Counted from the first letter of the stretch, positions 134-25,235 are shown. The stretch: 37,609 nucleotides of DNA from Selaginella moellendorffii (GCF_000143415.4 NW_003314389.1:1-37609), one strand, 5' to 3'. The notes: a model not told the origin generated them from the sequence alone. Program-made: numbers and translations.

Positions 134-159
134 CTAGCAGGGAACCCAGCTCCGCTGGG
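134..159 (-). mobile_element. Helitron 3' terminus (hairpin + CTAG)
   Basis: Minus strand reads CCCAGC-GGA-GCTGGG-TTCCCTG-CTAG|T: a GC-rich hairpin 7 nt before CTAG followed by T, the canonical Helitron 3' end. It lies downstream of the minus-strand RPA gene. Confidence 0.9.
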
Positions 160-791
160 ATAGTTAGATGCTAATTCTAAAAAGAGAACAATTTATTAAA
201 TCTTGCTTAAGTTCAATATGTAACAAGCACTTGGTTTATTTAGTTTTTACTAAGTGATTGCAACCAAACACTATTTCTTAAATGTTTAACTGGAATAGAA
301 TAATACAAGCTTGGACTCAAAGCTTAAAAGAATTATTCAACACATGAAGAGGTGGCTCAATCATATTCCTCAATTTGGTATATTATTTGGGCATTCCAGA
401 GGTAAGAGTAGTTAATGGGATGGTATGGTAAAGGGTTTTTTGGTATAGAATGGCTGGTTTTGCATTTGCAAGCAAGCGATGTGTATTGAAGTATAAATGA
501 CTGTATTTTCTGGTGGTCTATGTGTTTGTTCATTATAACATGCTAAATTCTGATACAGTTGATGCATTTGTCATTTATTGTCCACTTGAGAATCATGTGT
601 TGTTGTTCTTTCCCTTTTTTAGTTTTTGTATCTTGACATTCCTTTCTTGCTACAGATAACCATCAAACAGAGCTGATGTTTGCTAGGAGGTGTGTTTTAT
701 TTTATTTGTTTTTGCAAGTTCCATGTAACTACAAAACAAAACACAGATAAATATATCAACGTGTAAAAGATTAGAATGGAATCTGCATACC

Positions 792-2605
792 TTAGGTGTC
801 AAGTCCAAGTATATAGAACCTTAGCTTCTCCATGTCTTGGTATTTTTCAAGCTTGCTCCGGATTTTGAATTTGTAAATCTTTGAGCGGATACCATCGATA
901 AGTAGTGAAAATGCAAGGTAGTTCTCATCTCGCATTGTAGCTAGTTCCTTTGCTGACATTCCCACTATTTCCTGTGCAGCCTCTTGAAATGCAATGGCCC
1001 ACACATGACTGCTACTATCCTCGATGCACATCTTTAGAGCATACTTGAACTCCAGACTCAAAATTGCAATAATTGCAGAACCAACCATCTGCTGTTCGGG
1101 TAGTTTTTTTGCCACATTGCCGTGCATTCACGACATTGATGCATGCATTATAGTAAAACTCATCTGTCTTCATTTCCTTCACAGTAGCTATCACTCTATA
1201 GATAGGGGAACTCTCTAACACCTTTAACTGCATGTTTGATATCTCTGATAAAGTAGTGGTGCAGCTAACAGTCTGTCTGGATGATGAAGTGCTCAAATGT
1301 ATGAAGTTAGTGACATTGTAGTACAATGTCATCCATTCTCTCAAATCAGCCACTGCTTCCATTTCCGGTTCAATAAGAATGGTGCTCACACCAATTGCTG
1401 AAAGTGATTTACCATTGTAGTCTGATACTTTTCCACCCTTGACACATATTATTGGCTGAACTCCACTGTCTATCCGCTCCTGTATATATGAGCCCTCTTC
1501 TTCTGCTTTTAAATCCCAGAGACATAGATCAACACTGTGGCCTGAATCATCACCTAGACACAATGTTCTCTTCTTCACAAAAGTTCCACTGTCACGAGAT
1601 GTTACTGTAATTGTACCAATCCATATTACGATACCAACCACATCGACAAAAGAGTCCCTTTCCTTCTGACACGCACTTAATATGCTTGTTTTTGCCAAGA
1701 CAATTCTTGGGAACGTTGCATCCTCATCCAAAGCTGTAAACACCATACCTTTGTTAGCCTGAATCTCCCATGTCACTTCAAATGGTGTGTATGCCTGATT
1801 GGAACGTCGTATTCCACCACTACCAGAAAATGAATACACTGTACCCTGTACAATCTTATCTGACAAAACCAAGGCACAATCATCGGAGCCAATAATTCTA
1901 ATCTCTGTTCCCTGGACATCGACAACGTCAAATGACATTATGCATCCAGATCTTTTCGTGTTGAAATGTATCAACTTGTTCTTGTGTGTGACTCTTGCAC
2001 GGAAGGACCACCTGTAAGAACGGTCACTGATTTCTTTGATGAACACCTCTTTTATGACGGCCTTTTTTGAGCTCTCTCCCTGTATCAAAGGGAACAAATT
2101 GAATAAACTGGTTTAGACGTGAAATACCTTTTCCATGGACTCCTGGGCTCGTTTTTGACCCTGGCAAGTTCAATTGTAGCAGTTATTTTAGAATTAAAAC
2201 CAAAGAAAGGACTTACCACTTTCATATCTTGAAGGATAGGGTTTGAGTGTGTGCGCTTCCATACTCCACCATCCAGGAAGCATGCATCCGAAACAATCAA
2301 TGACCTACAGAATATTTTGGTGTTTAAAATGCTCTGTCAAAAGGAAAATACACTTACTGTTTCCCATTTGTCTCAAGGAACGCGTAGTCCAGGAATTTTA
2401 CAAATGAATTCAGACGGGCACCACATGAATCTATTAAACTTGAAACTCGGTGTGATGCAATTGCCTCGAGTATTTCTCTGTCATCCGTGACAGAGAACTT
2501 CTTGGTCAGAGCACCAGGCTTTGAATCTATATTCGTCACACGCAACACGAGTTCCTCTTTCGAATTTTCTTTGACCCTTCTGATCCCATCATCTGTGCAC
2601 TTCAT
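792..2605 (-). pseudogene. RPA1: Helitron-associated replication protein A 70-kDa subunit (RPA1-like), one frameshift near 1050
   Basis: N-terminal OB exon (2358-2605). GT-AG introns at 2305-2357, 2161-2216 and 2080-2127 keep the frame. DBD-A/B motifs RWSFRARVTHK, FVDVVGIV and DDSGHSVDLCLW. DBD-C zinc finger FYYNAC..CGKK..WFCNYC. The C-terminus (KYALKMCIEDSSSHVWAIAFQEAAQEIVG) lies in a different frame. Confidence 0.92.
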
Positions 2606-2781
2606 GATTGTTCACGATAGGGTTTCTCCGTGATATCTGCTATATAATGTTCACATTTATCAAACCGTTGGCAACGTTGTTATCACTGCCTTGATGCATA
2701 TGCATTGGTTGAAATAATAAAATTTATTCTTGTATTAGTGGGAAAAAAGATTACGACTTTATCTTCCTCCTCCCTCTCCAG

Positions 2782-3235
2782 NNNNNNNNNNNNNNNNNNN
2801 NNNNNNNNNNNNNNNNNNNNNNNNNNNNNNNNNNNNNNNNNNNNNNNNNNNNNNNNNNNNNNNNNNNNNNNNNNNNNNNNNNNNNNNNNNNNNNNNNNNN
2901 NNNNNNNNNNNNNNNNNNNNNNNNNNNNNNNNNNNNNNNNNNNNNNNNNNNNNNNNNNNNNNNNNNNNNNNNNNNNNNNNNNNNNNNNNNNNNNNNNNNN
3001 NNNNNNNNNNNNNNNNNNNNNNNNNNNNNNNNNNNNNNNNNNNNNNNNNNNNNNNNNNNNNNNNNNNNNNNNNNNNNNNNNNNNNNNNNNNNNNNNNNNN
3101 NNNNNNNNNNNNNNNNNNNNNNNNNNNNNNNNNNNNNNNNNNNNNNNNNNNNNNNNNNNNNNNNNNNNNNNNNNNNNNNNNNNNNNNNNNNNNNNNNNNN
3201 NNNNNNNNNNNNNNNNNNNNNNNNNNNNNNNNNNN
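2782..3235. other. Assembly gap (others at 5793-6018, 13282-13381, 21953-22052, 31775-31973, 34133-34232, 35801-36133)
   Basis: Runs of N. Three are exactly 100 N and are probably of unknown size. Confidence 0.99.
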
Positions 3236-4733
3236 CCTTTTGTTACCAAGGTTTTAAGGACCAAAGAGGATTACAACGCCCACGGAAACGGATTGCGTCC
3301 AGATAAGCACAAAATTGTGTCTGATGCATCTTCCAACACTCGAATTCCAGCTACACTTGCTGGTTATGAACGCAACTACTGAACACCATTTTGATCCATA
3401 GCAAAACAGTTTGATCTTCGTTTATTTGTAGTGTAGAAACTTGATGCATTCTTAAGCTTTTATAGGGCAAGCGTGTGCGAAGGGAAACAACTCCCAGGAA
3501 AAACACTTTCCTTTTCTTTTTTTTTCATCTGATTCTTCGTCTGAAAATCAGACGAATCCAACCAGCTCCAACCAGCTGCTCAAAGCATGCGATCCAATAA
3601 GCCAGACAGTAGGGCATGCATGTGAGTTGGCCTGCGTAATCTCCATTTCCCGGTGGCTGTCTTGCACGGTTAAGGAAACCTTTTCAAAAATCTAAAGGCT
3701 GAAGATAACAGGTGTTAGAACCCAGCGACAAGTAAAAGATCCACACCTGATTCCGATGTAACTCTCGAACCACCCTCGTCCTACCCCAGCCGTTAAGCTG
3801 GAAGAGACAAATGGTACGTGAAAATTCAGTCGGGCATCATAAAGAATGTCTACTCCACCACCCTGGTACCCCGTGTCAAATGCTCGACCTGTAGCAGCAC
3901 CAGACATAAACAATCATACAAAATTGCTGTTGCTATCTGTATGGCTTGTTGTGGACGGTAGTCCTTGTACTGCTGCACCTCTTCCGCTCTCATCCATGTA
4001 CACTGATTGAACTGTGTCAGTTATCTCGCATTTTCTTCCATATTGTATCGCTCTTCCTCCTGGTTTCCTCATGGTTGCTAGTGTATGACTGTGATAATCG
4101 TCTTGTGCTGGATGATTTTTCTGCACAAAGAATGCTTGTTTCCGTGTCTTGTATGCTAGAAGTTGATGTTGTGTAATCCAGAAACACAAAAGTCAAGTGT
4201 AAGCCTTTTTTTTATGCAGGTTCCAAATGATTGTAATTCAGCAGAGCAATATTTCTATCTACCAAGTAGAGTAATGGGAACTATTGCAAACCATCGTTGA
4301 AGAGCTGTAATATTTAAAAATTACGATGCAAAAGCCAGTGCTACTTTTTCAAAGCTAAGAAATTGGTTCCCTTTCAACAAAGTTTGCTGCTGGGTTTTGC
4401 CTTTAAAGCAGAAGCTGGTGTGCCAAATCCAAACCCTTCACACTCACCCGAGGAGAGGAACTATGTCATGTGGTCTGTTACACAGGTGGAGCTCGTCCAT
4501 ACGTACATGGACTTCCTCTTCCATGGGGGCTGCTATCTGGTTCGGCTGGATGAGCTGTATTATTTGGATTTATTTAGTTTATTTTCTGGCAATTTGAAAT
4601 TTTTTTTATACCATCAAATTAATGATGAGAGGACCATAGTATAGATTAAAACTTTTTTCTCAATCTATTTTTTAATATCTGTAAGACATGATGTTTTTCC
4701 TTTTTCTCAATCTCATTTTAATATTTGTCATGC

Positions 4734-7547
4734 TCATTGAATAGCCCACCGCTTGATAAGACTTATCATTCCGTTCAGCTGTTGAATCTGTAATAATAAC
4801 AAATACAGCTCAAAAAATACAAAATCATCTGAGAGGGATTAGAGGAAGATCAAGTACATTCTTTTGGGTTTTCAGCAACTGCCATTTTTAGATGTGCCTC
4901 CGCTCTGAAATGGAAATTTAAAGTCAGAAATAGATACAATTCATACGTACTTCAGTGATAGTTCCCTCAATGTAGCTAGTTTAGGAAAGTCATGTATTGG
5001 CTGAGCATCTTTCAGTGTGGAGGTGATCTCAGTGTCTATTTTTTTTCTAAATAGAAACTCTGCCATTTGTGATTTTACATTCTGGAAATCATCAGATTTT
5101 GAGTTAGCTTAAATTTAATTTATGTTTCTCACAAATTTACACCAAATACCTTATCTATTTCATTAACAAAGTGAGATTCCGATGCCTTTGTTGCTTTTCT
5201 TTGAAAATGTTTGGTGTCCTCGCAATCTTAGGACAATGATTAGCATTGTGAATATATTTTAGCAAAGAAACATCATTCTTGTGTTAAAATGTTCTACCGT
5301 GAAGATGTTCTATTTGTTGTTCATTCTGAAATTGGTATAAAGTTTTTTCTTTATGCGTCATGTTTTTTTTCTCGGTAGCAAAAGCAACATCAGCAACTAG
5401 TCTATCAATCTGCTTTTTCTGAAAGTCCTTCCTGTGTAGAAAAAGAACTTAATAAAAAGGTATAAACAAGCAAGCCAACCATAATCTTTTCTGCATTATT
5501 TGCAGTTGATACTCTAATTGTTGAACAATAGGTGTTCTTTCAAATCCTTGTTTATCATGAGTGGGCGCCACAAAGTTTGCTTCCAAAACTCCTAAATAAT
5601 GTTAAAGAATGTATCAAAGATCAATAGTAGAATAGTAAAACTTGCCATAGACACCTCGCCCTTGTTTTCATGATGAATTCCATATTTTCCAAAAGGGCTG
5701 TCATATATTAAATGAGAAAAATGATCTTTTTGAATGATTGGTTACCTTAATAAGTCGGTTTTTGTGGTAGACATTAAATCCTTGTATATCTANNNNNNNN
5801 NNNNNNNNNNNNNNNNNNNNNNNNNNNNNNNNNNNNNNNNNNNNNNNNNNNNNNNNNNNNNNNNNNNNNNNNNNNNNNNNNNNNNNNNNNNNNNNNNNNN
5901 NNNNNNNNNNNNNNNNNNNNNNNNNNNNNNNNNNNNNNNNNNNNNNNNNNNNNNNNNNNNNNNNNNNNNNNNNNNNNNNNNNNNNNNNNNNNNNNNNNNN
6001 NNNNNNNNNNNNNNNNNNTATATACCTGCAAACCTGAGTGGATGAGAAAGTGTATTTTAAATTTTTTCTTACCCGTAATGAACTTTTGTACAGGAAAAAG
6101 TGTTTAATACTGGAATATTTTTTTGCCATTTCACATTGTATGTCATGTTGACCATTTCTAATTCAGATATCCTTGATGGGTGTCAGAAAAGTAAAATTTT
6201 AAAATATAAAACATACATGAGGATCAGATTTGAAGTCTAGTTCAATTTGTTGCTCGTCATTCTCCCATAGATTATAGATAATTATTCTTGTCCCTTGGTC
6301 ATTAATTTTCTTGAACTTGAATAGTAGAGACACATAACTTAAGATTATTGATCTAGAGTACCTACTTGGCTATGAATAGATCCTTCATTTTGATAAGGAC
6401 TCCATTTAGTGATTACGTCCATACGAATTTTCCAATCTTGATGTGTACATTTATGGATCTCTTTTAACTCAAGCCCATTTCCTTCATAATCCAGCTGCAA
6501 ATATGAACAATGTGATGTATACACATCTAAGAGAATTTGGAATTATAATATCTTGCTGCACTGTATCACGGAGAAAGCTATAAGAGAGTAATCCCACACT
6601 TTGAATAAATCTGTACACAATGTTAAATAAAGTGGCGAAAAATATGGCAGTCAACTCTTATACCTGTCACCTACTGCAGTGTTTGATTTTGAAAATACAA
6701 TGACATTTGCACCAAGGCGCATTGTACTTGTCTTGAAACCATTTCCATCTGGTAGTATAAATAATATTAAAAAATGTAAAAAAAAAGATGGCACTTACAT
6801 TGTCCAATTGTTCTACTGGTTGTGTCATTTACAGAATACCCAAAGGACATACATTGTCGCAAATGATCAAGAGTCATTCCACCACCATTGTCTAAATTAA
6901 CAAATACAATGTTACTTGCATAAAGAAAGAAAAAAGGAAAAAAAAAATGTCTTACAAACCTTCAAACAGAAGCATTGGCGTGCCATTAACTGGATTCTTG
7001 AGAACATCTATGTTGGCAAATGTCACTCCATTTGTTGTCTGGTCGAGTGCATTATCAAGCAGCTTTGCTATTGCTGCAAAAAGTGTAAGATCATGCATTG
7101 GAAAGAAAAGAGGAACAGTGATATGCCTATTTGAATTACCACCAAAAGCCCACTTGTGGCTTCTTGCGTTAGAATGAAGGAATTTGGGATGCATTCGTAC
7201 GTGGTCCATTCCAGCTACAAAACCACGTAATGAGTTACTTCCTTAAAAGGCAGTCATAATGAGCAAGGACCTGGCATTGTTTGTGCATTAGAACCATCGT
7301 AATTTCCTGCTTTCCAAAACTGGGAACATTGTCTTGGCTGCTGTGTACAAACAACTGTTTTATCATTCTGTGCGGCATCCCCCTGAATTGGGAAAAACTC
7401 AAGAAAGTCGGCAGGCATGCACTCAATTTTAGGTTTCTTGTACTGGTTGCCGGCAACACCAGCTCTTTTCTTTCCAAAATTGGTGGACTTGTTTAGAATC
7501 AGACAGGGATTGATGCCTCTGGCAGTGAGCTCTTCGTCCCCTCCCAT
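4734..7547 (-). pseudogene. MORC: Microrchidia (MORC4/5/7-like) GHKL ATPase, multi-exon, near full length, at least two in-frame TGA stops
   Basis: Spliced translation gives, in order: [164 protein letters not shown]. Stops at 6163-6165 and 5668-5670. Part of the gene lies in gap 5793-6018. Both ends are approximate. Confidence 0.95.
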
Positions 7548-8384: not shown

Positions 8385-9310
8385 AGTGGTTTTTTGAGCA
8401 GTGGGAGTTGGAAGTGAAGGGAATTATATGCTGGCTGGGTGAGTTCTACCTTTTCAAAGTCAGTTGATAAAATTATAAACTACAAATTAACTTTATAAAC
8501 GATAGAGTTCTACTTCTTCCGTTATGTTTTCAGAGGTTTTTACATGCAAATGAAAGACCGCTAGGTTGCTATGCTGGATTGGATTGCCAGGTGCGGTCAG
8601 GCAAGAGAAACAGGTCTTGTCCCCACATTCACGTGCAACATTCCTCTTTTTTCTTTCCTCTGCTACCTGACCGCTTCTCTGTTTTGGGCTGCTCCCAGAT
8701 TCGGGTTGGAGTGATCGAGCAAGATGGATCCATTAGAGTTAATCAGAGCTTCACTTTTGACATCAAGGATCCAAATGTACAATTTTTGCAGCTTTGCAAT
8801 TTTTTTCTACTGACGAGTTTGGGTGGTTGGGCAGAATGCAGTTCTGCTGTTACACGTTGTTTCTAAGACACGTTTTGGAGGAGAAGACTCGCTTGGGATT
8901 TCTACGGAAGTTCGTGTTGCTGATCTTCTCGTTAAAAAGGGAGGTCTGAGGAAGGTGTCTTTTCTCCTTGTGCCACCTTATTGCTCTTTTTCATTTCAGG
9001 TGGTCAAGATGGAAAAACCAAGTGGTATGATCTTTCTGGGAAGAGATTAATGCCGGGGAAGGTGATCAGTCTGTTCGCTTGACTTTTAAAAATGTTCGTT
9101 GTTGTCGTGTATTTGCAGGTTTTAATGGACTTAGATGCAAGAATAGCTGAACCCGAGCATGATATCAGTGTTTTCTTGGGTACATGGAATGTAGGAAACG
9201 CAAGACTGGTATGTCAGCTATAATTCTGGACCAATTTGCTGATCTTTGGCAGCTCAGGCTGTGGATTTGTCATCGTGGCTTATTACAAAGAGCAAGCATG
9301 CTGAATTGCT
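8385..9310 (+). pseudogene. Captured multi-exon fragment of a C2-domain + inositol polyphosphate 5-phosphatase gene
   Basis: Spliced: LEVKGII..IRVNQSFTFDIKDP..LLLHVVSKTRFGGEDSLG..VADLL..KWYDLSGK..GKVLMDL (C2-like). This is followed by EPEHDISVFLGTWNVGNA..DLSSWL, the start of a 5-phosphatase catalytic domain, and then truncated. Confidence 0.75.
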
Positions 9311-9840
9311 CTAAGAAACCTTTACTTCTTCTTGGTACATGTCCATTTCATTTGAGGATTCAAAAAGTGCAGTGTCACCTCCTTTCCTTTGTTAAAAAAT
9401 ATAAATAAAATACAAGAGATCTTTTCCAGTGTTCATCAAGGGGAATTCGTTTTCATTTTGTCATCAAAAGAAAACTTAGTATCAAGAAGGTAGAGCAAGC
9501 AATGGGCAGAGACTGACCACCACAATTCCTATAAGCCCGTGATTGGAGTTCGTTAATGATATCAACATTGAAGCCACGTAACAAAGGTAGTGTGGGATTA
9601 AACTTGCAAGCTTGGTCCGAATTTGTTTTGAAGCAGGTTCATTCCAGTTCAAAACCAAGTCATCCACGTTTCATAGACATTCTAACCTTTGATGTCAATC
9701 TAATAGAAATTGGTTAACTTAAGTACAGAGTTTTCATTACCAGCGTAAAGTTGATATACACAGTTGTAAGGTTATGGTTTATATAACCATTTTATTTTGA
9801 GGAGCACTTGCATTTTTTATTTACTCCCAGTATAAGCCCT

Positions 9841-11935
9841 TCATTTTTTGGATGATGGTGCAAAACCAATTACATCATTAGATACATCTAGCAGAAACCT
9901 CCCCACGGGTGGATGTTTTATCATTTGTGTCTTGACATGTGTCGAATCCTTTTTCCAGCTCGTAAGAATTGGTTCTTTAGAACCGTAAAGATGATCAACT
10001 AAGTATGATGGAATGTTAATATCCCTGGTCATATTTTCCACGTGTATCTTCCCCTTTAAAGTCATAAGCTGTTTCACTGGGCCAACATACTTGCACACAG
10101 CACACACTGCAGTGTCTTTAGATGTTCTTTGTGTCACATGAGCTGCAAACGGTATGGATAAAAATAGGACGCAGCCTATCTATCTCAAACCATCCTGGCA
10201 CCTGTAATTGATTTGATGTCTGTTTTAGCATGTATTATATCTCATGTGGCTTACCCCATTACAACATATAGCAAGACTCCGGTATAAGGCTGTTAAAAAA
10301 TGGTTCTTTGCTGGATCAAGTATGCGTGTGACGATAGTCATTCCAGAGACATTCGCTCTTTTAAATACACCATCTCCTTGTAAGTTTATAAAGCACCGGC
10401 TAGGAGCAGTTTCCGAAAGGAATTCATTTAGCATCTCTCTGAATATATATATATTGCTTGCTAGGAATTTTACCTGGCATAAGTAAAATTGGGATCTATC
10501 AGTAATAGAATAAGTAAGTAATTATTCTATTACAGTTAACGTGTCGCTGGAGTCTCCATTGTCTGCAACTGTGATCTCAGCAGTATTATGTGCTAGGCTG
10601 TTGACCTTAATCATGACAGCTTCAATAGATCCAATTGAATCACGTCCCCTATGCATGTTAGTAAACTCTGCTATGCTTATTGTGGGCACAGAAAGTCGCA
10701 ACAAAGGAGGACTGTGCTGGAATTCTTCAACTATGGTTGTGTCCATGATCTTCAGAGTAAATCCCCATGTCCCCCTATCATATTTTGGGACTGTGGGGAT
10801 AACTTCAAAACCATACAACTTGAGCCATTTTCCTCTGGTAAATTCCTGTGCACGTTTCTTTGCTACTTCGTGGAACATCCATACAGTAATAGTTTCAGTG
10901 CCACCAAAGTCAGTCATGTCTACACGCAGTCGATTGCCTCCATGCACAATGCCTCGTTTGAGACCATAGCTGTTGAGTGTATACCCTGCAAACATTAACG
11001 TGCTTGCACTCTCGTCAATGCCAGTTATTTTGATTGCTGATGAGATTTCCATATGTTGGAGTTGCTTGATGTTTGTAATTTGTTGTGTTTCCATAGAAGA
11101 TAAAGCTACAAGATTTTATCGAGGTTAGTAATTCTACAGTTTGTTTTCTAAATTACCTTGACCAACCGAAACATTAGCTGTATATGCAATGGAGTCTTCC
11201 CTGTGCGTTTCTTCATGAGGTGTTTCATCTTCGTTTGAAACATATTTCACATTTAATTATTCTTAGCTAAAACATAACATACCTCCATCAGTAGCTAATG
11301 CTCTTGATTTCAGACAATCTAATTGTTATTAAAAAAACATAGAAAGTAAAAGAAATGTTTGGATGGACTTTAAAATAACTTTTTTTTTGCAATTTGTACC
11401 TTCATTAACAACGCTGGTGTCTTCCTGACATGGTTCTGTAACATTGAAAAAAGAAAGATTGCAAGTGTTTAGAAAAAATAGTAAAGTCAATTTTTTTTGC
11501 TTTGTAACCTTCATCGATGATGGCAGTATCTGCCTTTTTTGATTCCGATTGGTCTGTAGGAATTTAAAAACTTTTAGGAAAACAAAAAAATGAAAACTAA
11601 AGAACAAGTGTAATATTGTTCTACCTTTTCCTTGCATATTCTCAATTTCCATCTCACATGGTTCATTTGGTAGAGCAACTCTAATAGGTGCTTTGTGTTT
11701 TCTTCTTTGAACCTCAGCTGTGCATTCTTCAATGCAATCCCTGGAAATTCAGGCAAACTAATAACGAAAATACCTTCTTCAACATCATTTATCGGAGGAA
11801 TTGTGGTCAATGTGTCTTTAAGCCTCTTTCGATTGCTCTTCTTGGTGCCTTTGAAGGTCCAAGCACTTTAAAAATAGCTTTGGAAATGTGTGTACAAACC
11901 AAGAGTGTCTCTTTCCATCTCTTTATCGTTACCTG
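9841..11935 (-). pseudogene. Second, highly divergent RPA70-like tandem OB-fold protein with C-terminal CxxC..CxxC zinc finger; frameshifted
   Basis: The 190-aa ORF 10522-11094 has a DBD-A/B-like pattern (RVDMTDFGGTETITVWMF..A..F..G..L.GFEV...KY....L.I...TIVEE; SIAEF; ITVADNG..LT). The last exon has CSSC...CAVC split by a frameshift near 10120. Several short upstream GT-AG exons extend to about 11935. Confidence 0.65.
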
Positions 11936-14641: not shown

Positions 14642-15215
14642 ATACATCACCACTATTTGGTGGTAATACTCCTACCTGCTTCGGTGATAGCGCTCTATTG
14701 CATGTAATTATGCTACAGTGCATTGTCAAGTGAGCCGTGAGACTACAATTGAATCGGAGTGCCCACGCTCATCATGGGAATGGCCACCACACTTATCTCC
14801 GTGATATATTCTTCAGAGTCTTTGACCACTTTCCTGTCTTTGCCAGCTCCTCATCGCAAGGAAGGTAACATTAGAGCAAGGTTGTGATTTTTCTACTCAA
14901 TTCTTCTTCCAGAAGCTCCTTTGCAACCTTTGCTCTCAAAGGGAGATTTCAAAAACAGCAACAAACTAAGCAGCACTGGATCTGAGCACGACTTCAACGA
15001 AGTAAAGAAGCTGTCCCAGCACCGTCTTGTCACGTACATCTACTCATTCTTTTATCTTTTTGCAAGTATCTACTTGGCTATGTTGCTCACTAGACCGGGA
15101 TGCTATTAACGTTGGCTAGCTTTCAAAATGGGTCCAGATTGGCACAATGTGGTTCACAGCGGCACTATACATTTTGTTGCTCATAGCTTCACTCATTTTT
15201 TCAGCGCTGTTATAT
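14642..15215 (+). pseudogene. Captured C-terminal fragment of a Serinc (serine incorporator/TDE) membrane protein gene
   Basis: LLPASVIALYCM*LCYSALSSEP*DY, LIMGMATTLISVIYS, VTYIYSFFYLFASIYLAMLLT, INVG*..WVQIGTMWFTAALY. One intron. Several stops and deletions. Confidence 0.88.
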
Positions 15216-15306: not shown

Positions 15307-15600
15307 CTACAGTGGTGTTCTGCTTCCAGGGTCTTTATCAATTTTTTGCACTGAAGCAGTGAGATTTCCATCTTTATCTATGTTTATAGTGGATATGTCT
15401 CCGATTTCACTTCCATGATTCTTTAAGAATATCTGCCAGTTTGTATTGGTCTCAAATATGTTGTCGTTTTTTGTACCAGAGCACAGTTTGAACATGAATT
15501 CAGATGTTTCATCGAACACACAGATAATGTTTTGATTGTTGCAGCGGAAACAGTCTTCCGTAGTTTTTCTTGTCAATTCGTTTGGAAACTCCTAGTGGTT
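15307..15600 (-). CDS. Possible B3-like DNA-binding domain fragment
   Basis: RKTTEDCF..ICVFDE..FMFKL....N....NWQIFLKNHGSEIGDISTINIDKDGNL resembles the B3 pattern W..FVK.NGL..GD.I.F..D..G.L. Confidence 0.45.
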
Positions 15601-15738
15601 TTCAAATATTTTTTTCTACAAATTATAAAATACAACACGCATACATACCATCAACAAAACGCCTTTGCAGAAGTGGAAAGGACGAAGAATGAATGAAAAA
15701 TTCATTCTATTTGACCTAAACCTAACTACCAGTTTCAC

Positions 15739-17147
15739 ATGGAAAAGAACTTTGTTCCCCCCAATCTACCCAGAGATGTAGTTTTCAGAATTGCAGAAAG
15801 CAATGGCTTTTGTAGCGCAGTTTTTTCATGTGTAGCTAAAGAATTTTACATGGAATTTCAAAGTGATAGAATTTGGCAATTGCATTGTGAACAGGATTTT
15901 TCTGTCTACATGTGTACAGATTACGAAGGTAGACACTGCAGAACGTACAAGGTTTGTATTTTCACTTATTTGCTTAAAACAAATGTCAAACTTTGCTACA
16001 GGAAACTTACAAGAGTTGGTTCAATGTGTTCAAACGCTACAATTATAATATTACCTCTGTAACCAGAAAGTTGTGCCTTAAAATACGAAGCTTCCTCAGA
16101 TTTAAAGGTTTTGAGTACATGTCAACCAAAGGTTTACCAAATAACGTCATAAATGAAGCGGAGGCAATTTTGAATGTCAACCTTCCAAATTCTTTAAGAT
16201 GTCTACTGCTTTCTATGGATGGTCAGCCTGAAAATTGTATCATCAGTGGTTTACAGCATCAAGAATACAGATGTTTTATTGGTACTTATTGGACCTGCAA
16301 TACATTTATATGCTCGAAATTACTTTCACTCCGAGAGATTTGCTTGTTCACCATAGACTTGAGATTATCTGTGCCTTGTTTCCCTGCTAACTTGGTATCA
16401 TTTGGTTGCTCGTTGGATGCTTCAAAAATTTACTTTATAAATGTTCATTCAGGTAATGTAAACTGAACGTTAAAGAAGTCTCATTAGTAATTGGCTGAAC
16501 AGGTGATATTTTCATAACTTCAAAAGATTTCAGACTCAATTCTGAAGTTATGCTGTGTACACCTATATCTGTTTGTGGTGAGATGTCACTCATTTGCTGG
16601 CTTGCAAAGCTTTCATCTAATCTGCATACTGGAAAATCTCGTTTAATTCAAAACCCCATTAAAGCTATATTTCAAGGTGGTTTGGCAGCAAATAGACTGT
16701 ATCATGTAAGGCTTTACCAGTTTGTTCTTTGCTAATTCATTGTGTCTATGTCCTTTAGCATGGTTGTGTACCAATACCGAAGTTGTCATCCTTTGCTAGT
16801 GATGAGTTTACATATGTAGCATTTATATGCATAGATTCAGAATACCTCTCGCTGTACAACAACATATACCTTTGTGCATCACACAAGTCAAAAAGTAATG
16901 TTAATGATACTCTTTTGCACAAATTTAGCATATGGTTTGGTTCTCAAGAGGTAAGCATCTTTACTTGGTATTATATAGATGATAAATTAGTGTACAGGAG
17001 TATTGCTATGATGGAAGAACATATGGTGTCATGACTAAAACATTTACATTGGAAGTTCCACTATGCACTGTGTGGGTTGCATGCAAGTCGAAATCAGAAA
17101 CTTTGACTAAATCCCTGGATGTATCTTTTTTGGATTATATGTTTTAA
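15739..17147 (+). CDS. Divergent SKIP16-like F-box protein (F-box + SMI1/KNR4-like + degenerate ApaG region), apparently intact, ~402 aa
   Basis: Exons 15739-15951, 16002-16452, 16503-16705, 16759-16950 and 16998-17147 are joined by 47-53 bp GT-AG introns into one stop-free frame. Motifs: LPRDVVFRI..SCVAK..SDRIWQLHCEQD, YKSW...F..Y, EAEAILNVNLP..LR.L....DGQ, LLSLREI, KIYFINVHSG, LICWL, and terminal DYMF* (cf. SKIP16 DYIF*). Confidence 0.8.
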
Positions 17148-17851: not shown

Positions 17852-20800
17852 TTAGAAGCAAGCTCGTGAATGTGTTATTAATGTATTGAATAGAAATGAT
17901 TTTCCTGTTCCTCCTACATCATCGATAGAAAATATTTGTGGTTCATTTTTATCATCCAATGCTTTACATACTTTGTCAAAGACATATTGTTGATCTTTAT
18001 TCAGTAACAATTTGTTTCTTTCAATATCTTGGTATTCAAACATTTCATTCTCATATATGTTGGTTCTTTCTTTATTATTTTCTAGATATGTAGTACATGA
18101 TATAGTAATATCATAATCTGAAAGGCATTTCCCATGTTGTTCTAGTAAAAGAGACAACTCTTGAAGTGCATGTGCATATGCTACATCCTCATCATTGTAT
18201 TTACGTATTAAATCCTCACACATATCTACTTTGTATTTATTCCATAATTTTTTAGGATCATTAACCTCACAAAAGAGACACATTATTCCAAATAAATATC
18301 TAATTTTAGAAGGCATTTGAAATGTGAGAGACTCCTCTAGACATCTATCCCATTCTTGGTCATCCTGTAATAATCCCATCGTTTGTGCAACTTCTCGATA
18401 GCTATCATATTGTATGTTTTTCCAATTACGTAAATGTTTAAAACTTGTTGCACCTTTATTATACAACAATAATAATCGCATATAAAATCGTTCACTATCT
18501 TTCGGTGGTACAGTGTACATTCTACCTATAACTTTCCAACCTCGTTGTCTTTTTACCCATGTTTTGTTTTTTGCATTCCAACTATACCATTCCGGAATTT
18601 CTGGATATGTTAAAGTTCTTGCAAATTCATCTCTTTTATTCAATTCAAACCATTCAGTAAGTTTTGTTCTATGACCTTTCTCTAATGCAATTTCTTCTTC
18701 ACCTTCATTGAAGTAAACACTTTGCAAATTTGGTAAGTGCACATCTAATCTTTCAATTGAATGTGATCTTCCATGTAAATCATATCCAAATAACCTCCAC
18801 ATTCCTTCAGCAGTTGATACATAACGGCAATTTTTGAATGCATTTATTTCATTCCAATCAAGAATATTCTCTTTCTCTGTGTTTCCTTCTTTGTGAAAGT
18901 GTATCTCTGCACAATCATGGCCTTTATATATATATTTAAAAATATATTTCACACTTTTCACAGTTGAGCAAACCTCTACATTAATATGAGTTTTATATTT
19001 ACGCAAAAGATACTTACTATAAGGAACAACAAACCTATTATCAATTTCATTATTTTTAATGTAGATTTTATGACTATCATAACGTCTTTTATACTCTGGG
19101 AATTGGCCACTGATATTTTTTGTCTCTTCATAGTAATCTCATGGATATCGAGATTTACATTCACCTTTTTTGTAACATGGACTTTCAGGAAATCCAGGAC
19201 CACATGGACCATGTATCATATGTTTTTTCACAAGTTCATACAATTCAGGATCACTGTTTGGGTCTGGTATTTCTGCACTAACAATGTTGTCTACATCATC
19301 TACGGTTTTGATTTTATTCTCATTTTTAAGAATTACAAGTAGATGACAATGTGGTAGTCCTCGTTTTTGGTACTCAATTACATACACATATGCATTAACT
19401 TTTCCAAATATTTCTTCTTTGTATATGTCATCTATAAGTTTTTGTTTTTTAGCATGGAAAACACGTGCTACCAAATCTGGTCTGTCTGAAGAACTTTGTC
19501 CTAGTAATAAATTCTCAGTTATCTCTTGCCATTTTGGGTTACACGTCATCGTAATAAATAAATCAGGTTTTCCATATTTTCTTACTAAGCTCATAGCGTC
19601 TTGATAATTTTGATTCATATTTCTCGGTCCACCGATAAATCCTGATGGCAAAATCACAAGTTTTCCAGCATGTATCCCTTGTTGTTCTGCTCTGTTTATA
19701 ACAAAATCAGAAAGACCTCCGTATGCTTCAGCTCTTAATTCTCGTTGATGGTTTTTTATCCAATCAAGACGACCACCCTCTACTTTAGTGTACATGTCAA
19801 CCATGTATTGTTGGGATAATTTTCCACCCATTAAAACCGAATTAAATTCAATAATCTTAATACTATCTCTTATTAAACCACGAATAGCAAACTTGTAGCG
19901 ATAATACTCCATCATTGTTATCTTAGTTTTTTTTAAAGACAAACCCTTGTCTGTGTATTTTAAATCTGGTGACCAGCCTTCATTTCCATTTGGAAAAAGC
20001 AGTGGATATACCATAGGATCACAACATGATGTCACAATTGATATCTCTTGCATACTTTCACCTTTCGGATGTATTGCAATACTACAGTTAAATGGAGGCT
20101 CCCCAGTAGGGTTTGTAAACACTGCAGGAACTTCATTTGAATTTGGTGCATTATATCTTCTTGGATCTATTGTATTTTCACCTTTTATATACATTACAAT
20201 ATTATGTAGTCCATTATTTATATTTGAACTTGTCATATGAAGCTCATCTTCCACATCTTTTAGCATTTTAAATGCCTTTGCATATGGATTAATTTCTCGT
20301 AATAAAGCATCTAATTCATTCATCAGTGTTGTATCACATTTACTGTTATATTTACTTTTCATTCTTGTTTCTGTAGCTTCTAGTGTGTCTAAAATATAAA
20401 GTTGAGAATATTTTGCATCATGACCTTGCTTAGGACGGAAACTGCCAATTGAATGATATACTTGTCCATGAATTTTGAAATAATATGGTCCATTGCCAAT
20501 CAGTTCATCAATATTTGCCCCCATAGATGCAAATGCCAAAGCACTATTATAATTTCGAATTAATTCTTTGAATTTTCCTCATTGGTCTGTTCCATCTAAT
20601 AATTTACAAATCAGTTCAGGGAACTCATTTTGTTTTTCTATAGACACACGTCCACCATGACAGCATTGTGATTGTGTTACTGAAGCAAAAAGAAAAGCTT
20701 TACAATAGTCACAATGTTTGTCCATGAGTCCAATATAATCTACTTTACATTTACCGTCTATGTTGTTTTGCAAGAGTCCTAAATGTTTAGTGTTTTCCAT

Positions 20801-21055
20801 GCTCTCGGTTTCATTTCCAAGATTTACTTCATTAACAGGTAGGGTAATAATTTCAAAAGTGTTTCTAAAAGTCTTTTCTATGGGTATCAATCTTGGAATT
20901 GTTGGGGGTTCTTCAAAGGATACCAGGTTTCTCACACTTACATCCATGCTTCTATTCATATATAGAGATGAATTCAAAGTTGTTGAACTTTTTTTTATTA
21001 TACAGCCTTCATGTAAAATTAGATCACATGTTTTCCTCTTTCTTTTGCCGCCCAT
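17852..21055 (-). pseudogene. Helitron Rep/helicase (HUH Y2 Rep + start of PIF1 helicase), two in-frame TGA stops, truncated just after Walker A
   Basis: ORFs 20579-21055, 19139-20539 and 17852-19006 share one frame, with stops at 20579 and 19139. Zn finger CDYC..CCHGG. Rep motifs PDLFITMTCNPKW, YVIEYQKRGLPHCHLL, HMIHGPCG and KYIFKYIYKGHD. GGTGKSFL is followed by loss of homology. Confidence 0.97.
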
Positions 21056-21559
21056 TGATCTGTAGGAGATTTTACAATCTCTTTTAGAAAATAGAAGCTT
21101 AGACAGCGTGTGCAGGCTCTAGATGGTGAAAATAAGTAAATAGACTAATAGCCAAACCACAAGAAAATAGAAGCACACTGAAACAAAGTGCTGGCAGAAG
21201 CACAGCTCCTTAATATGATGCTTGGGGTCCCTATACTTTGGAGCAGAACAACATTACAAAGCCGGGAAAAACAAAGCTCAGGAAACATAGAAACAAAATT
21301 ACCTCTTGACAAATGCGAAAGCAACCTAATTGTGTAGTCCTTTTTTCTATGATTTGAAACAGTTTTTCTTAGCCTACGTGTCTGTTTAGGTACACTCTCG
21401 AAAAGCCTTTGACAGTAAAGAGTTTTGCCACAGCTTTTTCTGTCAATCATTTTTTCATTTGGGGCAGAATCATTGCACTTGGGGATAAAAAATTACAGAG
21501 TCATACCGATATGATAGCCCGGGTTAAAAGATTACAGAGGGTGAATCTCTTTTGGCAAG

Positions 21560-23000: not shown

Positions 23001-24748
23001 TGCATCACAAAAAGGCTTTTTAATCCCATATATAAGAAACGACTATGAAAAAACTCACCTTCCTGTGTCACCAAAACCAAGGGATTTGACAGGCCGAAAA
23101 TGGTGGAGTCCGTTTATCACCACTAGTTTGAATCTGCTTTTAAAACAAGCAAGAAAACTGGAGAAGTCATCAGACTAAACATGCACTCATGAATCTTTCT
23201 AATAGCATCCCAAGAGTTTAGATAAACGACTTTAGAGAGTTTAGCCCAAAGGTCGTTGGTTGTCTTGTCTGGACACGAGCAAAAGAAAAAAAAATCTTGA
23301 ACTCCCAAACAACCCTCTGTTACTCGCCCCTGCACAACAAGAACAAGTTAGCCACAGAGATCAAGTGAAACGAGAGATCATTTTAAAACCTAGAGCCATA
23401 TGCACGCTGGGAATCTTGTTGCAAGCCCTTGACGCGACAGGATGAGAGATCCAGGAGCACCAGGCAGTCTCTTCGTTGCTTGATCATATATGAGCTGCCC
23501 AAGCACGTACTCCTTGTTGTACATAATAAGAGGCAGTAAAATATGCACATGTAAAGAAGCACTGAGAATATGCATACATCTGAACCAGGTCTGCAGCTGC
23601 ATCATGTCTTGACAACACTGTCACCTCCAAACCTCACAGCATATCTCTGGCCTAAAGAAATCGTCAACAAGAACAACACAAGAAAGAGAAAACGTACCAT
23701 AAAATTTGCAGTCTCTTGATCTTCCAAAGTCGTATCAAACAATGACATGACCACTGAGTGGGTATATTGTATGGCACACACAACATGGCGAACAGGAGGG
23801 ATTGTACACTTGCATCACAAAAAGGCTTTTTAATCCCATAAATAAGAAACGACTATGAAAACCTTGCCTTCCTGTGTCACCAAAATCAAGAGATTTGACA
23901 GGCTGAAAATGGTGGAGTCAGTTTTGCGCCACTAGTTTGAATCTGCATTTCAAACAAACAAGAAAACTGGAGAAGTTATCAGACTAAACATAGGCTTATG
24001 AACCTTTCTAATAGCATCCCGAGAGTTTAGATAAACGACTTTAGAGTGTTTAGCCCAAAGGCCGTTTGTTGTCTGGACACGAATAAAAGAAACAAAATCT
24101 TGAACTCCCAAACAGCCCTCTGTTACTCGCTCCTGCGCAACAAAAACCAAGTTAGCCTCAGAGATCAAGAGAAATGAGAGATCAGCCATTCGCACGCTGG
24201 GAATCGTGTTGCAAGCCCTTGGCGTGACAGGGTGAGAAATCCGGGAGCATCAGCCAGTGGGGAACTCGTCACAGAGCTGGAGATCGTGTTCATCAGACTG
24301 TCCGCCATTGACCTGTGCATGTGTCGCGAATGGCGTTGAACAGTCAACGATCCAGCCTTTTGCTTCTGCCACCAAAATCAAGAGATTTGACAGGCTGAAA
24401 ATGGTGGAGTCAGTTTCTCACCACTAATTTGAATGCATCCCGAGAGTTTAGATAAACGACTTTAGAGTGTTTAGCCCAAAGGTCGTTGGTTTTCTGGACA
24501 CGAGCAAAAGAAAAAAAATCTTGAACTCCCAAACAGCCCTCTGTTACTCGCTCCTGTGCAACAGAAACCACGTTAGCATCAGAGTTCAAGAGAAATCCGG
24601 GAGAAATCCGTGACAGGGTAAGAAATCCGGGAGCATCAGCCAGTGGGGAAGTTGTCACAGAGCTGGAGATCGTGTTCTTCAGACTGTCCGCCATTGACCT
24701 GTGCGTGTGTTGTGAATGGCGATGAACAATCAACGATCCAGCCTTTTG
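22995..24748. repeat. Three diverged direct repeats of ~0.4-0.55 kb (cores start at ~23070, ~23878, ~24370)
   Basis: CACCAAAA.CAAG.GATTTGACAGGC.GAAAATGGTGGAGTC, GAGTTTAGATAAACGACTTTAGAG and AATCTTGAACTCCCAAACA.CCCTCTGTTACTCG each recur three times. Copies 1-2 share an extra 5' block and copies 2-3 share an extra 3' block. Confidence 0.92.
23480..23720 (-). pseudogene. ATXR3: ATXR3/SDG2 (H3K4 methyltransferase) C-terminal fragment
   Basis: W.RDML*GLEVTVLSRHDAAADLVQMYAYSQCFF and MYNKEYVLGQLIY match the ATXR3 motifs WLRDEVRNLP..RHDAAADLIHIYAYTKCFF and TYGENYCLGQLIFW. It sits between repeat copies 1 and 2. Confidence 0.78.
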
Positions 24749-24785
24749 CAAAGGGTACGCACACTCCCGCCACTGCTTTCACCAC

Positions 24786-24790
<5 letters not shown>

Positions 24791-24862
<72 letters not shown>
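24791..24862. repeat. (AG)36 microsatellite
   Basis: Seen directly; ~230 bp inside the putative 5' end of unit 1. Confidence 0.99.
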
Positions 24863-24867
<5 letters not shown>

Positions 24868-24884
24868 AGCTCACAATCTGCTCG

Positions 24885-25235
24885 ATCGCCCTAAAAGATT
24901 CACTTGATTTGGAGGGTCATCAAATTCAAATTTTAAAAGTTGCCACCCCTTGGAACTTTGATCTATGCCATCTATTTTAAGTTTTTGAATTTGAACCGTT
25001 AGATTATAAGTATATTCAAAAATAATATTCTAAAAATGGAATAAAAGACGCTGGATGCCATATGCCAATAGCACGTTTAAATAAGGGAGTACTAGCAAAA
25101 GTCCCAGCTACGCTGGGAGCATCATGTTTATTCCTGATGTTTTAGTAATTTCAAAGAGTTGTAATTGTAATTGTAATTTTTAACATAATCATTATTATAG
25201 CATACATAATTAAACATAATATAATATTTATATTG
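24885..25235. repeat. ~350-bp junction segment repeated at ~36276-36620
   Basis: Highly similar sequence from ATCGCCCTAAAA through GAACCGTTAGATTATAAG, GGGAGTACTAGCAAAAGTCCCAGCTACGCTGGGAGCAT and ATAATATTTATATT. Confidence 0.95.
25092..25118 (-). mobile_element. Helitron 3' terminus (unit 2)
   Basis: Minus strand TCCCAGC-GTA-GCTGGGA-CTTTTG-CTAG|TACTC. Confidence 0.9.

What the first reader, a model, noticed from the sequence alone, without database searches (positions are those of the whole stretch)
134..25091. Gene-rich giant Helitron with two classes of cargo: whole diverged genes versus shredded host fragments
Seen: RPA70, MORC, the RPA-like gene, the SKIP16-like gene and small orphans are long, keep their introns and have no or few lesions. 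The 5-phosphatase, Serinc, PPR, kinase and ATXR3 pieces are short partial fragments, most with stops or deletions. Inference: the first class could be an accessory toolkit of a large Helitron lineage (ssDNA binding, chromatin ATPase, ubiquitin-ligase adaptor), analogous to host-manipulation genes of DNA viruses.
Basis: partly seen in the sequence, partly recalled or inferred. Interest (0 to 1): 0.8.

Follow-up and report, generated by a model that had tools for sequence, protein, structure and literature searches.

The report
Spikemoss Helitron carrying conserved cargo genes
This 25-kb stretch of the spikemoss Selaginella moellendorffii is one broken copy of a multi-copy rolling-circle transposon (Helitron) family whose lineage kept several extra genes readable for a long time, including a copy of the host's transposon-silencing gene MORC7 and an F-box gene, alongside short scraps of other host genes.

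Summary
Window 134-25091 (minus strand) is one Helitron of Selaginella moellendorffii. Five other loci on other scaffolds are colinear with it at 90-98% identity. Four of them stop at the same hairpin+CTAG 3' end as the window, and the four flanks I aligned all differ.

- **Gaps:** paralogous copies bridge three of the four gaps.
- **This copy is dead:** RepHel has two in-frame stops and lacks about 2 kb of helicase.
- **Whole genes confirmed:** RPA70; an OB-fold RPA-like gene; an F-box/SMI1-KNR4 (SKIP16-like) gene; and exons 1-13 of host MORC7 with all 12 intron positions kept.
- **MORC:** 71% amino-acid identity to the host gene, dN/dS about 0.15-0.2. No stop is shared between copies; each copy decayed on its own. 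The C-terminal third is unrecognisable.
- **Conservation across families:** a distant Helitron family (RPA70 49% identical) carries intact homologues of the F-box gene, its B3-like neighbour and the RPA-like gene, but no MORC in the 22 kb fetched.
- **Fragments:** ATXR3/SDG2 is confirmed and Serinc is weakly supported. The 5-phosphatase, PPR and kinase pieces were not found.

Recurrence and long-term selective retention are supported. Host manipulation is untested. The scan already noted the MORC-carrying Helitron family on other DNA of this genome.

The parts
134..25091 (-). One defective copy of a large Helitron family of Selaginella moellendorffii (about 25 kb, including about 880 N).
   Evidence: Colinear at 90-98% with L001, L002, L003, L004 and L006 on other scaffolds. 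Termini located.
134..162 (-). 3' terminus: hairpin CCCAGCGGAGCTGGG, a short spacer, then CTAG, followed by a flanking T.
   Evidence: Homology with L001, L003, L004 and L006 stops at window base 133/134, and the flanks aligned (window, L001, L002, L003) all differ. The L002 terminus is truncated.
25070..25091 (-). 5' terminus TACTCCCTTATTTAAAC. It directly abuts the CTAG of another Helitron's 3' end at 25092.
   Evidence: The same break point is seen at window 36475 and at L004 19275, where the upstream sequence differs.
17855..21118 (-). RepHel remnant: one frame of 1088 codons with 2 in-frame stops. HUH (GLPHCHLLV), YxxxY and Walker A motifs are present, and the frame is then truncated.
   Evidence: Helitron_like_N E 2e-61, and only PIF1 profile positions 2-46 are present. 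Motifs and stops. L004 has about 2 kb more, encoding the PIF1 core and the Pif1_2B domain.
1018..2611 (-). RPA70-like gene (ssDNA-binding OB folds), a standard plant Helitron gene. The main ORF is 1018-2112.
   Evidence: REPA_OB_2 E 2e-19. 100% identical to SELMODRAFT_430315, and 7 paralogous gene models are 88-98% identical.
5479..7538 (-). MORC7-derived gene, exons 1-13 (GHKL ATPase plus S5 domain). Exons 10-11 lie in gap 5793-6018. This copy has 2 stops, a 17-bp loss of a splice donor and an E-to-K change in the N-box.
   Evidence: Gene models on the paralogues carry HATPase_c_3 and Morc6_S5.
9844..11115 (-). Second, RPA-like OB-fold gene (two exon ORFs: 10525-11115 and 9844-10179).
   Evidence: DUF223 E 0.045 and tRNA_anti-codon OB fold E 0.09. 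Atlas 0.95 to OB-fold, DUF223 and REPA_OB_2 clusters. 64% and 52% identical, stop-free homologues in the distant family L007.
15715..17031 (+). F-box / SMI1-KNR4 (SKIP16-like) gene. Four exon ORFs: 15715-16059, 15978-16463, 16499-16732 and 16759-17031.
   Evidence: SMI1_KNR4 E 1.7e-4. Atlas 0.93. F-box profile against GID2 at E 1e-3. All four exons are 41-47% identical and stop-free in L007.
15310..15591 (-). Small conserved ORF, possibly B3-like, adjacent to the F-box gene.
   Evidence: B3 E 0.023 only. 39% identical homologue in L007 with the same position and orientation relative to the F-box gene. The PDB profile search found no B3 domain.
14888..15106 (+). Short Serinc-like fragment (profile positions 344-387 of 434).
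   Evidence: Pfam E 0.0015, below the curated cut-off. Present in L002 and absent from L007.
23386..23601 (-). ATXR3/SDG2 C-terminal fragment. It lies in a locally duplicated block, 22992-24750.
   Evidence: SDG2_C in 2 ORFs of 21.1-25.0 kb, best E 1.4e-7. This ORF scores E 0.0037. Duplications. The block is shared with L003.
8471..9405 (+). Orphan ORFs matching a 152-aa gene model called on the paralogues.
   Evidence: Gene models on L001 and L002 have no Pfam hit. No Pfam hit here either. No homologue in L007.
11320..12856 (-). Orphan region matching a 392-aa gene model called on L001.
   Evidence: No Pfam hit. No homologue in L007.
13282..13381 (.). Assembly gap whose continuity could not be tested.
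   Evidence: No fetched copy covers 12857-14121. The apparent absence in L002 is itself a 100-N gap.

Best explanation
Window 134-25091 (minus strand) is one dead copy of a Helitron family of Selaginella moellendorffii with at least six copies.

**What the family carries**
- The rolling-circle machinery: RepHel and an RPA70-like ssDNA-binding gene.
- A stable cassette of accessory genes: a second OB-fold RPA-like gene, an F-box/SMI1-KNR4 (SKIP16-like) gene with a small neighbouring ORF, and the first 13 exons (ATPase plus S5 module) of the host silencing gene MORC7.
- Short scraps of host genes (ATXR3/SDG2, probably Serinc) and orphan ORFs.

**Shown**
- The cassette moves as one unit.
- The F-box, neighbouring-ORF and RPA-like genes pre-date the split of two Helitron families and stayed readable.
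- MORC was captured as genomic DNA in the Selaginella lineage. It then evolved about 3-7 times faster than the host gene while remaining an open frame until the last burst of copies. Each copy has since decayed separately, at least in part through CGA-to-TGA changes.

**Inferred**
- The accessory genes were selected because they helped the element.
- Most plausibly the OB-fold proteins coat the single-stranded transposition intermediate.
- The MORC module, which has no recognisable C-terminal third (the host protein's linker and coiled-coil-like tail), and the F-box adaptor may interfere with or redirect host chromatin silencing or protein turnover. This would be similar in spirit to transposon-borne anti-silencing factors and viral F-box suppressors.
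For: **Organism and copies**
- RPA70 ORF is 100% identical to SELMODRAFT_430315, with paralogues at 88-98%.
- Colinear copies: L001 (window 133-12856), L002 (148-16214), L003 (24793-21684 joined to 8556-134), L004 (21439-16020 joined to 2244-133) and L006 (a degraded 3' part).
- Shared 3' end with unrelated flanks in the four copies aligned.

**MORC**
- The host gene has 19 exons.
- The Helitron copy keeps exons 1-13 with the same 12 intron positions.
- Over 466 codons: 71% amino-acid identity, dN 0.18, dS 0.94-1.21.
- It is sister to host MORC7 with support 1.0. The host branch is 0.043 and the Helitron stem 0.29. Tajima counts against the three nearest outgroups are 39-42 versus 10-13.
- Stops differ between copies and several are CGA-to-TGA.
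- In a neutral simulation, P(no stop) is 0.0008 at 12.5% nucleotide divergence.
- Catalytic motifs: AELLDNALD in L001-L003, and DNGGGM in the window, L001 and L003.

**Cross-family conservation**
- In L007 (RPA70 49% identical), the homologues are stop-free over their aligned stretches: F-box exon 41%, SMI1 exon 45%, the next two exons 47% and 44%, the neighbouring ORF 39%, the RPA-like exons 64% and 52%.
- Third codon positions are 35-50% identical against 50-81% at the first two positions. dN is 0.26-0.57, well below a saturated dS.
- SMI1 exon, window versus L004: dN 0.018, dS 0.118.
Against: - Every sampled copy is broken, including RepHel here.
- No expression or small-RNA data could be obtained.
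- dN/dS between close copies is no clearer than in non-coding control frames, which ranged from 0.2 to 3.6.
- The MORC C-terminal third is unrecognisable, so it is not a whole gene.
- The domain calls for SMI1-KNR4, F-box, B3 and DUF223 are all weak or below curated cut-offs.
- Both AlphaFold models were unusable.
- No host SKIP16 sequence could be fetched for comparison.
- The L007 locus holds no Rep within its 22 kb, so its status as a Helitron rests on RPA70, the hairpin+CTAG end and the cassette.
- The 5' end of the full-length type was seen in only three places, each next to another Helitron end.
Confidence: 0.8

Rival explanations
1. The cargo genes are passive passengers. They were captured by chance, like the fragments, were never of use to the element, and look intact only because the captures were recent.
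For: - All copies carry lesions.
- Fragment capture by plant Helitrons is commonplace (review PMC13317346).
- dN/dS between close copies is not distinguishable from the non-coding controls.
Against: - MORC differs from its host source by 29% of residues, with dS about 1, yet no stop is shared over 466 codons and both coding indels are in frame.
- The F-box, neighbouring-ORF and RPA-like genes are stop-free over their aligned stretches at 39-64% identity in a second Helitron family, with a coding pattern of codon-position conservation.
Confidence: 0.12
2. The 25 kb is not one mobile unit. It is either a mis-scaffolded or nested mosaic, or two or more tandem Helitrons joined by read-through of an internal 3' end.
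For: - There are four N gaps.
- Head-to-tail Helitron junctions are frequent here: window 25091, 30707 and 36475; L004 12212 and 19272; L006 11289.
- Gap 13282-13381 and the stretches 12857-14121 and 21440-21683 are covered by no other copy.
Against: - The order on both sides of three gaps is the same in gap-free paralogues.
- The deletion derivatives L003 and L004 join distant parts of the same 25 kb at clean break points and still end at the same 3' terminus.
- No internal hairpin+CTAG end lies within 134-25091.
Confidence: 0.06
3. The MORC-like and F-box genes are host genes, or host-domesticated genes, that merely sit among Helitron debris.
For: NCBI annotates the paralogues as ordinary proteins, and the clustered search groups them with 'MICRORCHIDIA 7'.
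Against: - The same genes lie in the same order between the same transposon termini at loci with unrelated flanks.
- The true host MORC7 is a separate 19-exon gene, flanked by an HSP33-domain gene and a PPR gene.
- The copies decay independently.
Confidence: 0.02

Closest known systems
Canonical plant Helitrons encoding RepHel plus RPA-like proteins (Kapitonov and Jurka; summarised in PMC9033089)
   Same: - Rep with HUH and two tyrosines.
- PIF1-type helicase (seen in the paralogue L004).
- RPA70-like OB-fold genes.
- 3' hairpin followed by CTAG, with a flanking T.
- Multi-copy family with internal-deletion derivatives.
   Different: - The 5' end reads TACTC..., not TC..., and sits directly against other Helitrons' 3' ends.
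- The element is unusually large, about 25-27 kb.
- It carries further conserved genes beyond RPA.
Gene-fragment capture by plant Helitrons and Pack-MULEs (review PMC13317346)
   Same: The ATXR3/SDG2 and Serinc scraps are short, partial and carried along passively. This is the classic pattern.
   Different: The MORC, F-box and OB-fold genes are multi-exon, were retained for a long time and show coding constraint. The review mentions neither MORC nor F-box cargo.
Fungal DNA transposons, Helitrons included, that carry a TET/JBP dioxygenase (PMC12730594)
   Same: A DNA transposon lineage keeps a captured enzyme of the host's epigenetic machinery as a lasting accessory gene.
   Different: - Different kingdom and different enzyme: a demethylation-pathway dioxygenase versus a GHKL chromatin ATPase.
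- Here the captured gene is a partial copy of a silencing factor, not an eraser of the silencing mark.
VANC anti-silencing factors of VANDAL (Mutator-like) elements in Arabidopsis (Fu et al. 2013, cited in PMC13317346)
   Same: A transposon-encoded accessory protein proposed or shown to counter host silencing of its own family.
   Different: VANC is unrelated in sequence and its function has been shown by experiment. No function has been tested for the Helitron genes here.
Arabidopsis F-box protein SKIP16 (my own knowledge: F-box plus SMI1/KNR4 plus ApaG domains)
   Same: An N-terminal F-box-like exon followed by an SMI1/KNR4-like exon.
   Different: No ApaG domain was detected. Both domain matches are weak. 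No host orthologue could be fetched for a direct comparison.

Membership tests
Helitron (rolling-circle transposon) | Rep domain with an HUH motif and two catalytic tyrosines | tested here: met
   Helitron_like_N E 2e-61. GLPHCHLLV and VKYIFKYIY are present in the frame.
Helitron (rolling-circle transposon) | PIF1-like helicase fused to Rep | tested here: inconclusive
   In the window only PIF1 profile positions 2-46 and Walker A remain. The paralogue L004 has the PIF1 core (E 1.5e-24) and Pif1_2B (E 1.5e-17) in the 2 kb missing here.
Helitron (rolling-circle transposon) | 3' end with a short hairpin followed by CTRR, inserted before a T, with no target-site duplication | tested here: met
   Hairpin plus CTAG, then T, in the window, L001, L003 and L004; the aligned flanks are unrelated.
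Helitron (rolling-circle transposon) | 5' end beginning with TC, after a host A | tested here: not met
   The element begins TACTCCC directly after another Helitron's CTAG. Other junctions carry (TCA)n between the two ends. This is a non-canonical or still unresolved 5' end.
Helitron (rolling-circle transposon) | Multiple dispersed copies sharing termini and internal sequence | tested here: met
   Six loci on different scaffolds at 90-98% identity.
MORC (GHKL ATPase) family | GHKL ATPase motifs (N-box ExxxNAxD and DxGxG) | tested here: met
   AELLDNALD in L001-L003, and DNGGGM in the window, L001 and L003. The window copy has E-to-K and L002 has G-to-D. HATPase_c_3 is recorded on the paralogue gene models.
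MORC (GHKL ATPase) family | MORC S5-fold domain | tested here: met
   Morc6_S5 E 5e-12 on 5452-5601(-).
MORC (GHKL ATPase) family | C-terminal coiled-coil region, as in full-length plant MORCs | tested here: not met
   Host residues 493-758 give no credible match in any of the four copies. The one weak match carries a stop shared by all four.
RPA70-like proteins | RPA OB-fold DNA-binding domains and the C-terminal domain | tested here: met
   REPA_OB_2 E 2e-19. Rep_fac-A_C scores 28.0 bits against a cut-off of 28.5 on the ORF. Both domains are recorded on the gene models.
SKIP16-type F-box proteins | F-box | tested here: inconclusive
   A two-sequence profile matches the F-box of GID2 at E 1e-3. 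Pfam gave no hit on the exon.
SKIP16-type F-box proteins | SMI1/KNR4 (SUKH) domain | tested here: inconclusive
   Pfam E 1.7e-4 at 22.6 bits, below the 25.4 cut-off. Atlas 0.93, with all top hits SMI1_KNR4. The PDB profile search found nothing.
SKIP16-type F-box proteins | C-terminal ApaG domain | tested here: not met
   No Pfam hit on the downstream exons 16499-16732 and 16759-17031.
ATXR3/SDG2 histone methyltransferase | SET domain together with the SDG2 C-terminal region | tested here: not met
Only short SDG2_C pieces were found. There is no SET motif in any frame.

The most novel reading that the evidence does not exclude
A lycophyte Helitron lineage maintains a counter-defence toolkit. 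It would consist of a MORC7 ATPase/S5 module without the C-terminal tail, acting as a decoy or poison subunit of the host's MORC silencing machinery, together with an old F-box adaptor that sends a host factor to the proteasome. This would be the transposon equivalent of viral silencing suppressors.
Probability: 0.25. Interest if true: 0.85.

Novelty: new variant of a known kind. Interest (0 to 1): 0.6.

Why it matters
Helitrons are known for shredding and shuffling host genes, and their only accepted accessory genes are RPA-like. Here a Helitron lineage shows two clearly different fates of cargo in one element.

- Several multi-exon genes were kept readable over long evolutionary distances. 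One of them derives from MORC7, a host factor that silences transposons.
- These genes sit beside ordinary decaying scraps of other host genes.

If the retained genes act against host control, this would be a plant DNA-transposon counterpart of the VANC factors and of the fungal transposons that carry TET/JBP. It would also give a direct handle on how MORC-based silencing can be evaded. Even without that, it gives a clear internal contrast for studying what decides whether captured DNA is kept or lost.

Tried and rejected
1. **Reads.** The second try used an N-free stretch. I then stopped, so there is no read-level test of the gaps, of copy number or of expression, and read laying was not used.
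2. **Homologue searches.**
   - The search for homologous proteins with the 162-aa SMI1 exon returned nothing because of its length filter, so no host SKIP16 was obtained.
   - With the Rep ORF it returned only proteins of 263-838 aa, mostly animal Helitrons at 45-49% identity and no Selaginella model. This is probably a length artefact, and I draw no conclusion about horizontal transfer.
3. **Structure.** AlphaFold single-sequence models of the RPA-like ORF and the SMI1 exon had pLDDT 31 and 34. They were too poor for a fold search, so none was run.
4. **PDB sequence searches.** Searches with the RPA-like ORF, the SMI1 exon, a MORC exon, the B3-like profile and three ORFs of the neighbouring element gave nothing useful.
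5. **Look-ups by exact product.** These failed for P0001, P0002, P0006, P0008 and P0012.
6. **Pfam.** Scans of about 190 ORFs of 40 aa or more found no kinase, PPR or 5-phosphatase. A motif scan of all six frames found none either.
7. **A correction.** I first read L002 as lacking 11040-14121. That stretch coincides with a 100-N gap in L002, so it is not a deletion.
8. **dN/dS between near-identical copies.** I rejected this as evidence, because non-coding control frames ranged from 0.2 to 3.6.
9. **Spliced models.** Exons were searched one by one by reference. Exon-wise alignment columns were combined only inside local scripts, for the dN/dS and tree calculations.

Full report
**What the window is**

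The RPA70-like ORF at 1018-2112(-) is 100% identical to a Selaginella moellendorffii protein. Seven further gene models of that species are 88-98% identical to it. The window is therefore spikemoss DNA from assembly GCA_000143415.2.

On the minus strand there are:
- a Rep domain (Helitron_like_N, E 2e-61);
- the very start of a PIF1 helicase;
- an RPA70-like gene.

On the minus strand the copy at 145-159 is followed by CTAG ending at 134. At 25092 another such 3' end is followed directly by TACTCCCTTATTTAAAC, starting at 25091.

**Is it one element, and does it recur?**

Using the paralogous RPA70 gene models as handles, I fetched five related loci from other scaffolds.

| Locus | Scaffold | Matches window | Identity |
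|---|---|---|---|
| L001 | GL377606 | 133-12856, colinear | 96-98% |
| L002 | GL377600 | 148-16214, colinear | 95-99% |
| L003 | GL377711 | 24793-21684 joined to 8556-134; gap-free deletion derivative with a clean break point | 95-98% |
| L004 | GL377586 | 21439-16020 joined to 2244-133 | 91-95% |
| L006 | GL377566 | degraded 3' part, ending at window base 133 | 90-96% |

- The window, L001, L003 and L004 end at the same hairpin+CTAG followed by T, and L006 homology also stops at base 133. In the alignment of the window, L001, L002 and L003, everything beyond that point is unrelated. The L002 terminus is truncated.
- The 5' break point at 25091 recurs at window 36475 and at L004 19275. There the upstream sequence is a 3' end of a different subfamily.
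The gene set recurs in order, and the region is not a mosaic.

**The gaps**

| Gap | Length in window | Length in paralogues | Where it lies |
|---|---|---|---|
| 2782-3235 | 454 N | 465-485 bp | upstream of RPA70 |
| 5793-6018 | 226 N | 226 bp | holds MORC exons 10-11, which are in frame in the paralogues |
| 21953-22052 | 100 N | 261 bp (L003) | 5' region |
| 13282-13381 | 100 N | not covered | inside 12857-14121 |

- No fetched copy covers 12857-14121. The apparent absence of this stretch from L002 is itself an N gap.
Contiguity across the last gap, copy number and expression therefore remain untested.

**State of this copy**

- RepHel is a single frame of 1088 codons (21118 to 17855) with two in-frame stops.
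- Its HUH, double-tyrosine and Walker A motifs are intact, but it stops just after Walker A.
- L004 has about 2 kb more at this point, encoding the PIF1 core and the Pif1_2B domain.
- The window copy is therefore a dead, non-autonomous copy. The full-length form would be about 27 kb.

**Class 1: the "whole" genes**

*RPA70.* This gene is confirmed, but it is standard Helitron equipment (PMC9033089).

*MORC.*
- The nearest protein in a library of 1.8 billion representatives is the host's own MORC7.
- The host gene has 19 exons.
- The Helitron gene keeps exons 1-13 (residues 6-492: the GHKL ATPase and the S5 domain), with all 12 intron positions unchanged. This shows capture of genomic DNA.
- Residues 493-758 are not recognisable in any copy.
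- Over 466 aligned codons, identity is 71%, dN is 0.18 and dS is 0.94-1.21.
- In a tree of plant MORCs the Helitron genes are sister to host MORC7 with support 1.0. The host branch is 0.043 and the Helitron stem 0.29.
- Relative-rate counts against the three nearest outgroups are 39-42 changes unique to the Helitron against 10-13 unique to the host.
- The lesions are private to each copy, and several are CGA-to-TGA changes:
  - the window has two stops, a 17-bp loss of a splice donor and an E-to-K change in the N-box;
  - the other copies have different stops or a frameshift.
- The common ancestor of the copies therefore had an open, catalytically plausible gene.
- A neutral simulation gives a probability of 0.0008 of escaping all stops, even if only half the observed nucleotide divergence fell on the Helitron branch.
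- I conclude that the gene was under relaxed purifying selection inside the Helitron lineage. If dS is split evenly between the two branches, omega on the Helitron branch is about 0.25-0.3. That figure is an inference, not a fitted model.

*RPA-like gene (9844-11115).* It has only weak Pfam OB-fold hits. It has Atlas feature scores of 0.93-0.95 to OB-fold, DUF223 and REPA_OB_2 clusters.

*SKIP16-like gene (15715-17031, plus strand).*
- It has four exon ORFs.
- The SMI1_KNR4 match falls just below Pfam's cut-off and is supported by the Atlas.
- The first exon, as a two-sequence profile, matches the F-box of GID2 at E 1e-3.
- No ApaG domain was found.

**The strongest evidence for a toolkit**

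L007 (GL377583) carries an RPA70 only 49% identical to the window's, and a 3' end of the same type. It holds homologues, stop-free over their aligned stretches, of:
- all four exons of the F-box/SMI1 gene (41-47% identity);
- the small neighbouring ORF, possibly B3-like (39%), in the same relative position and orientation;
- both exons of the RPA-like gene (64% and 52%).

It holds no MORC, Serinc or orphan homologue within 22 kb.

Third codon positions are near random (35-50% identical), while first and second positions are 50-81% identical. dN is 0.26-0.57 against a saturated dS. These figures are comparable to those for RPA70 itself, which is what co-inheritance would predict. These genes therefore pre-date the split of two Helitron families and were kept as genes. 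MORC looks like a later addition specific to the window's family, although the 22 kb fetched of L007 cannot exclude a copy further away.

**Class 2: the fragments**

- An ATXR3/SDG2 C-terminal fragment is confirmed. Two ORFs match, best E 1.4e-7, and one of them is 23386-23601(-). It lies in a locally duplicated block that L003 also carries.
- A Serinc piece is weakly supported (E 0.0015) and is shared with L002.
- I found no trace of the claimed 5-phosphatase, PPR or kinase pieces.
- The fragments belong to the family, not to this copy alone, but they are absent from the fetched part of the distant family.

**How it most likely works**

*Shown:* one mobile unit with a fixed cassette; long-term coding constraint on the accessory genes; and recent, independent decay of all sampled copies.

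*Inferred:*
- The OB-fold proteins serve the single-stranded intermediate.
- The MORC module, which has no recognisable C-terminal third (the host protein's linker and coiled-coil-like tail), and the F-box adaptor act on host chromatin control or protein turnover.
- I put about 0.25 on a true anti-silencing role.

**Comparison with what is known**

- Full-text searches found no paper describing a transposon that carries MORC.
- A 2026 review of gene capture by plant transposons mentions neither MORC nor F-box cargo.
- The nearest precedents are fungal transposons, Helitrons among them, that carry TET/JBP dioxygenases (PMC12730594), and the VANC factors of VANDAL elements.
- Within this scan, other windows of the same genome had already been noted and followed up as Helitrons carrying a MORC7 copy, and one note describes a fixed cassette with F-box and B3-like genes. 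My results agree with these notes but were derived independently.

**Limits**

Exons were searched singly by reference and combined only inside local scripts.
- Several domain calls are weak.
- The 5' end is non-canonical, and it was seen only next to other Helitron ends.

Noticed in passing
window 25091/25092, 30707/30708, 36475/36476; L004 12212 and 19272; L006 about 11277-11289: Helitron 5' ends (TACTC...TATTTAAAC) sit directly after the CTAG of another Helitron's 3' end. The two are separated by zero, one or four copies of TCA. This suggests either insertion targeted at resident 3' ends or junctions derived from concatemers or circles, with a slipping (TCA)n spacer.
   Followed up: partly
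window 25092-30707 (minus strand): The upstream neighbour is another element, about 5.6 kb long, with the same kind of ends. It holds an inverted 112-bp Rep fragment at 26115-26226. Its stretch 26362-27836 is 70-81% similar to DNA next to the RPA-like gene of the distant family L007.
   Followed up: no
window 19142-20578 (-): Within the search's length limits, the best matches to the Rep ORF are animal Helitron proteins (sea urchin, nematodes, Hydra, Daphnia, rotifers) at 45-49% identity. No plant protein appears in the top 120. This is probably an effect of the length filter and was not pursued.
   Followed up: no
protein P0134 (XP_024521937, annotated 'MICRORCHIDIA 4', 160 aa, on a 342,514-bp scaffold): This short gene model is made of pieces of several MORC7 exons, about 86% identical to the host gene over its first 81 residues and 62% over a second stretch. 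It is closer to the host gene than to the Helitron MORC. It may be a separate, shredded capture of the same host gene.
   Followed up: partly
window 22992-24750 and 24791-24863: The 5' region of the element holds nested local duplications (units offset by about 390-1230 bp, 86-94% identical) that include the ATXR3 scrap, followed by an (AG)36 microsatellite. L003 shares this layout.
   Followed up: partly
L007 10001-12082 versus 8796: In the distant family, the RPA70 gene lies about 1.2 kb from the 3' end, as it does here, but on the opposite strand relative to the element's other genes. The RPA-like gene also sits on the other side of the F-box gene.
   Followed up: no
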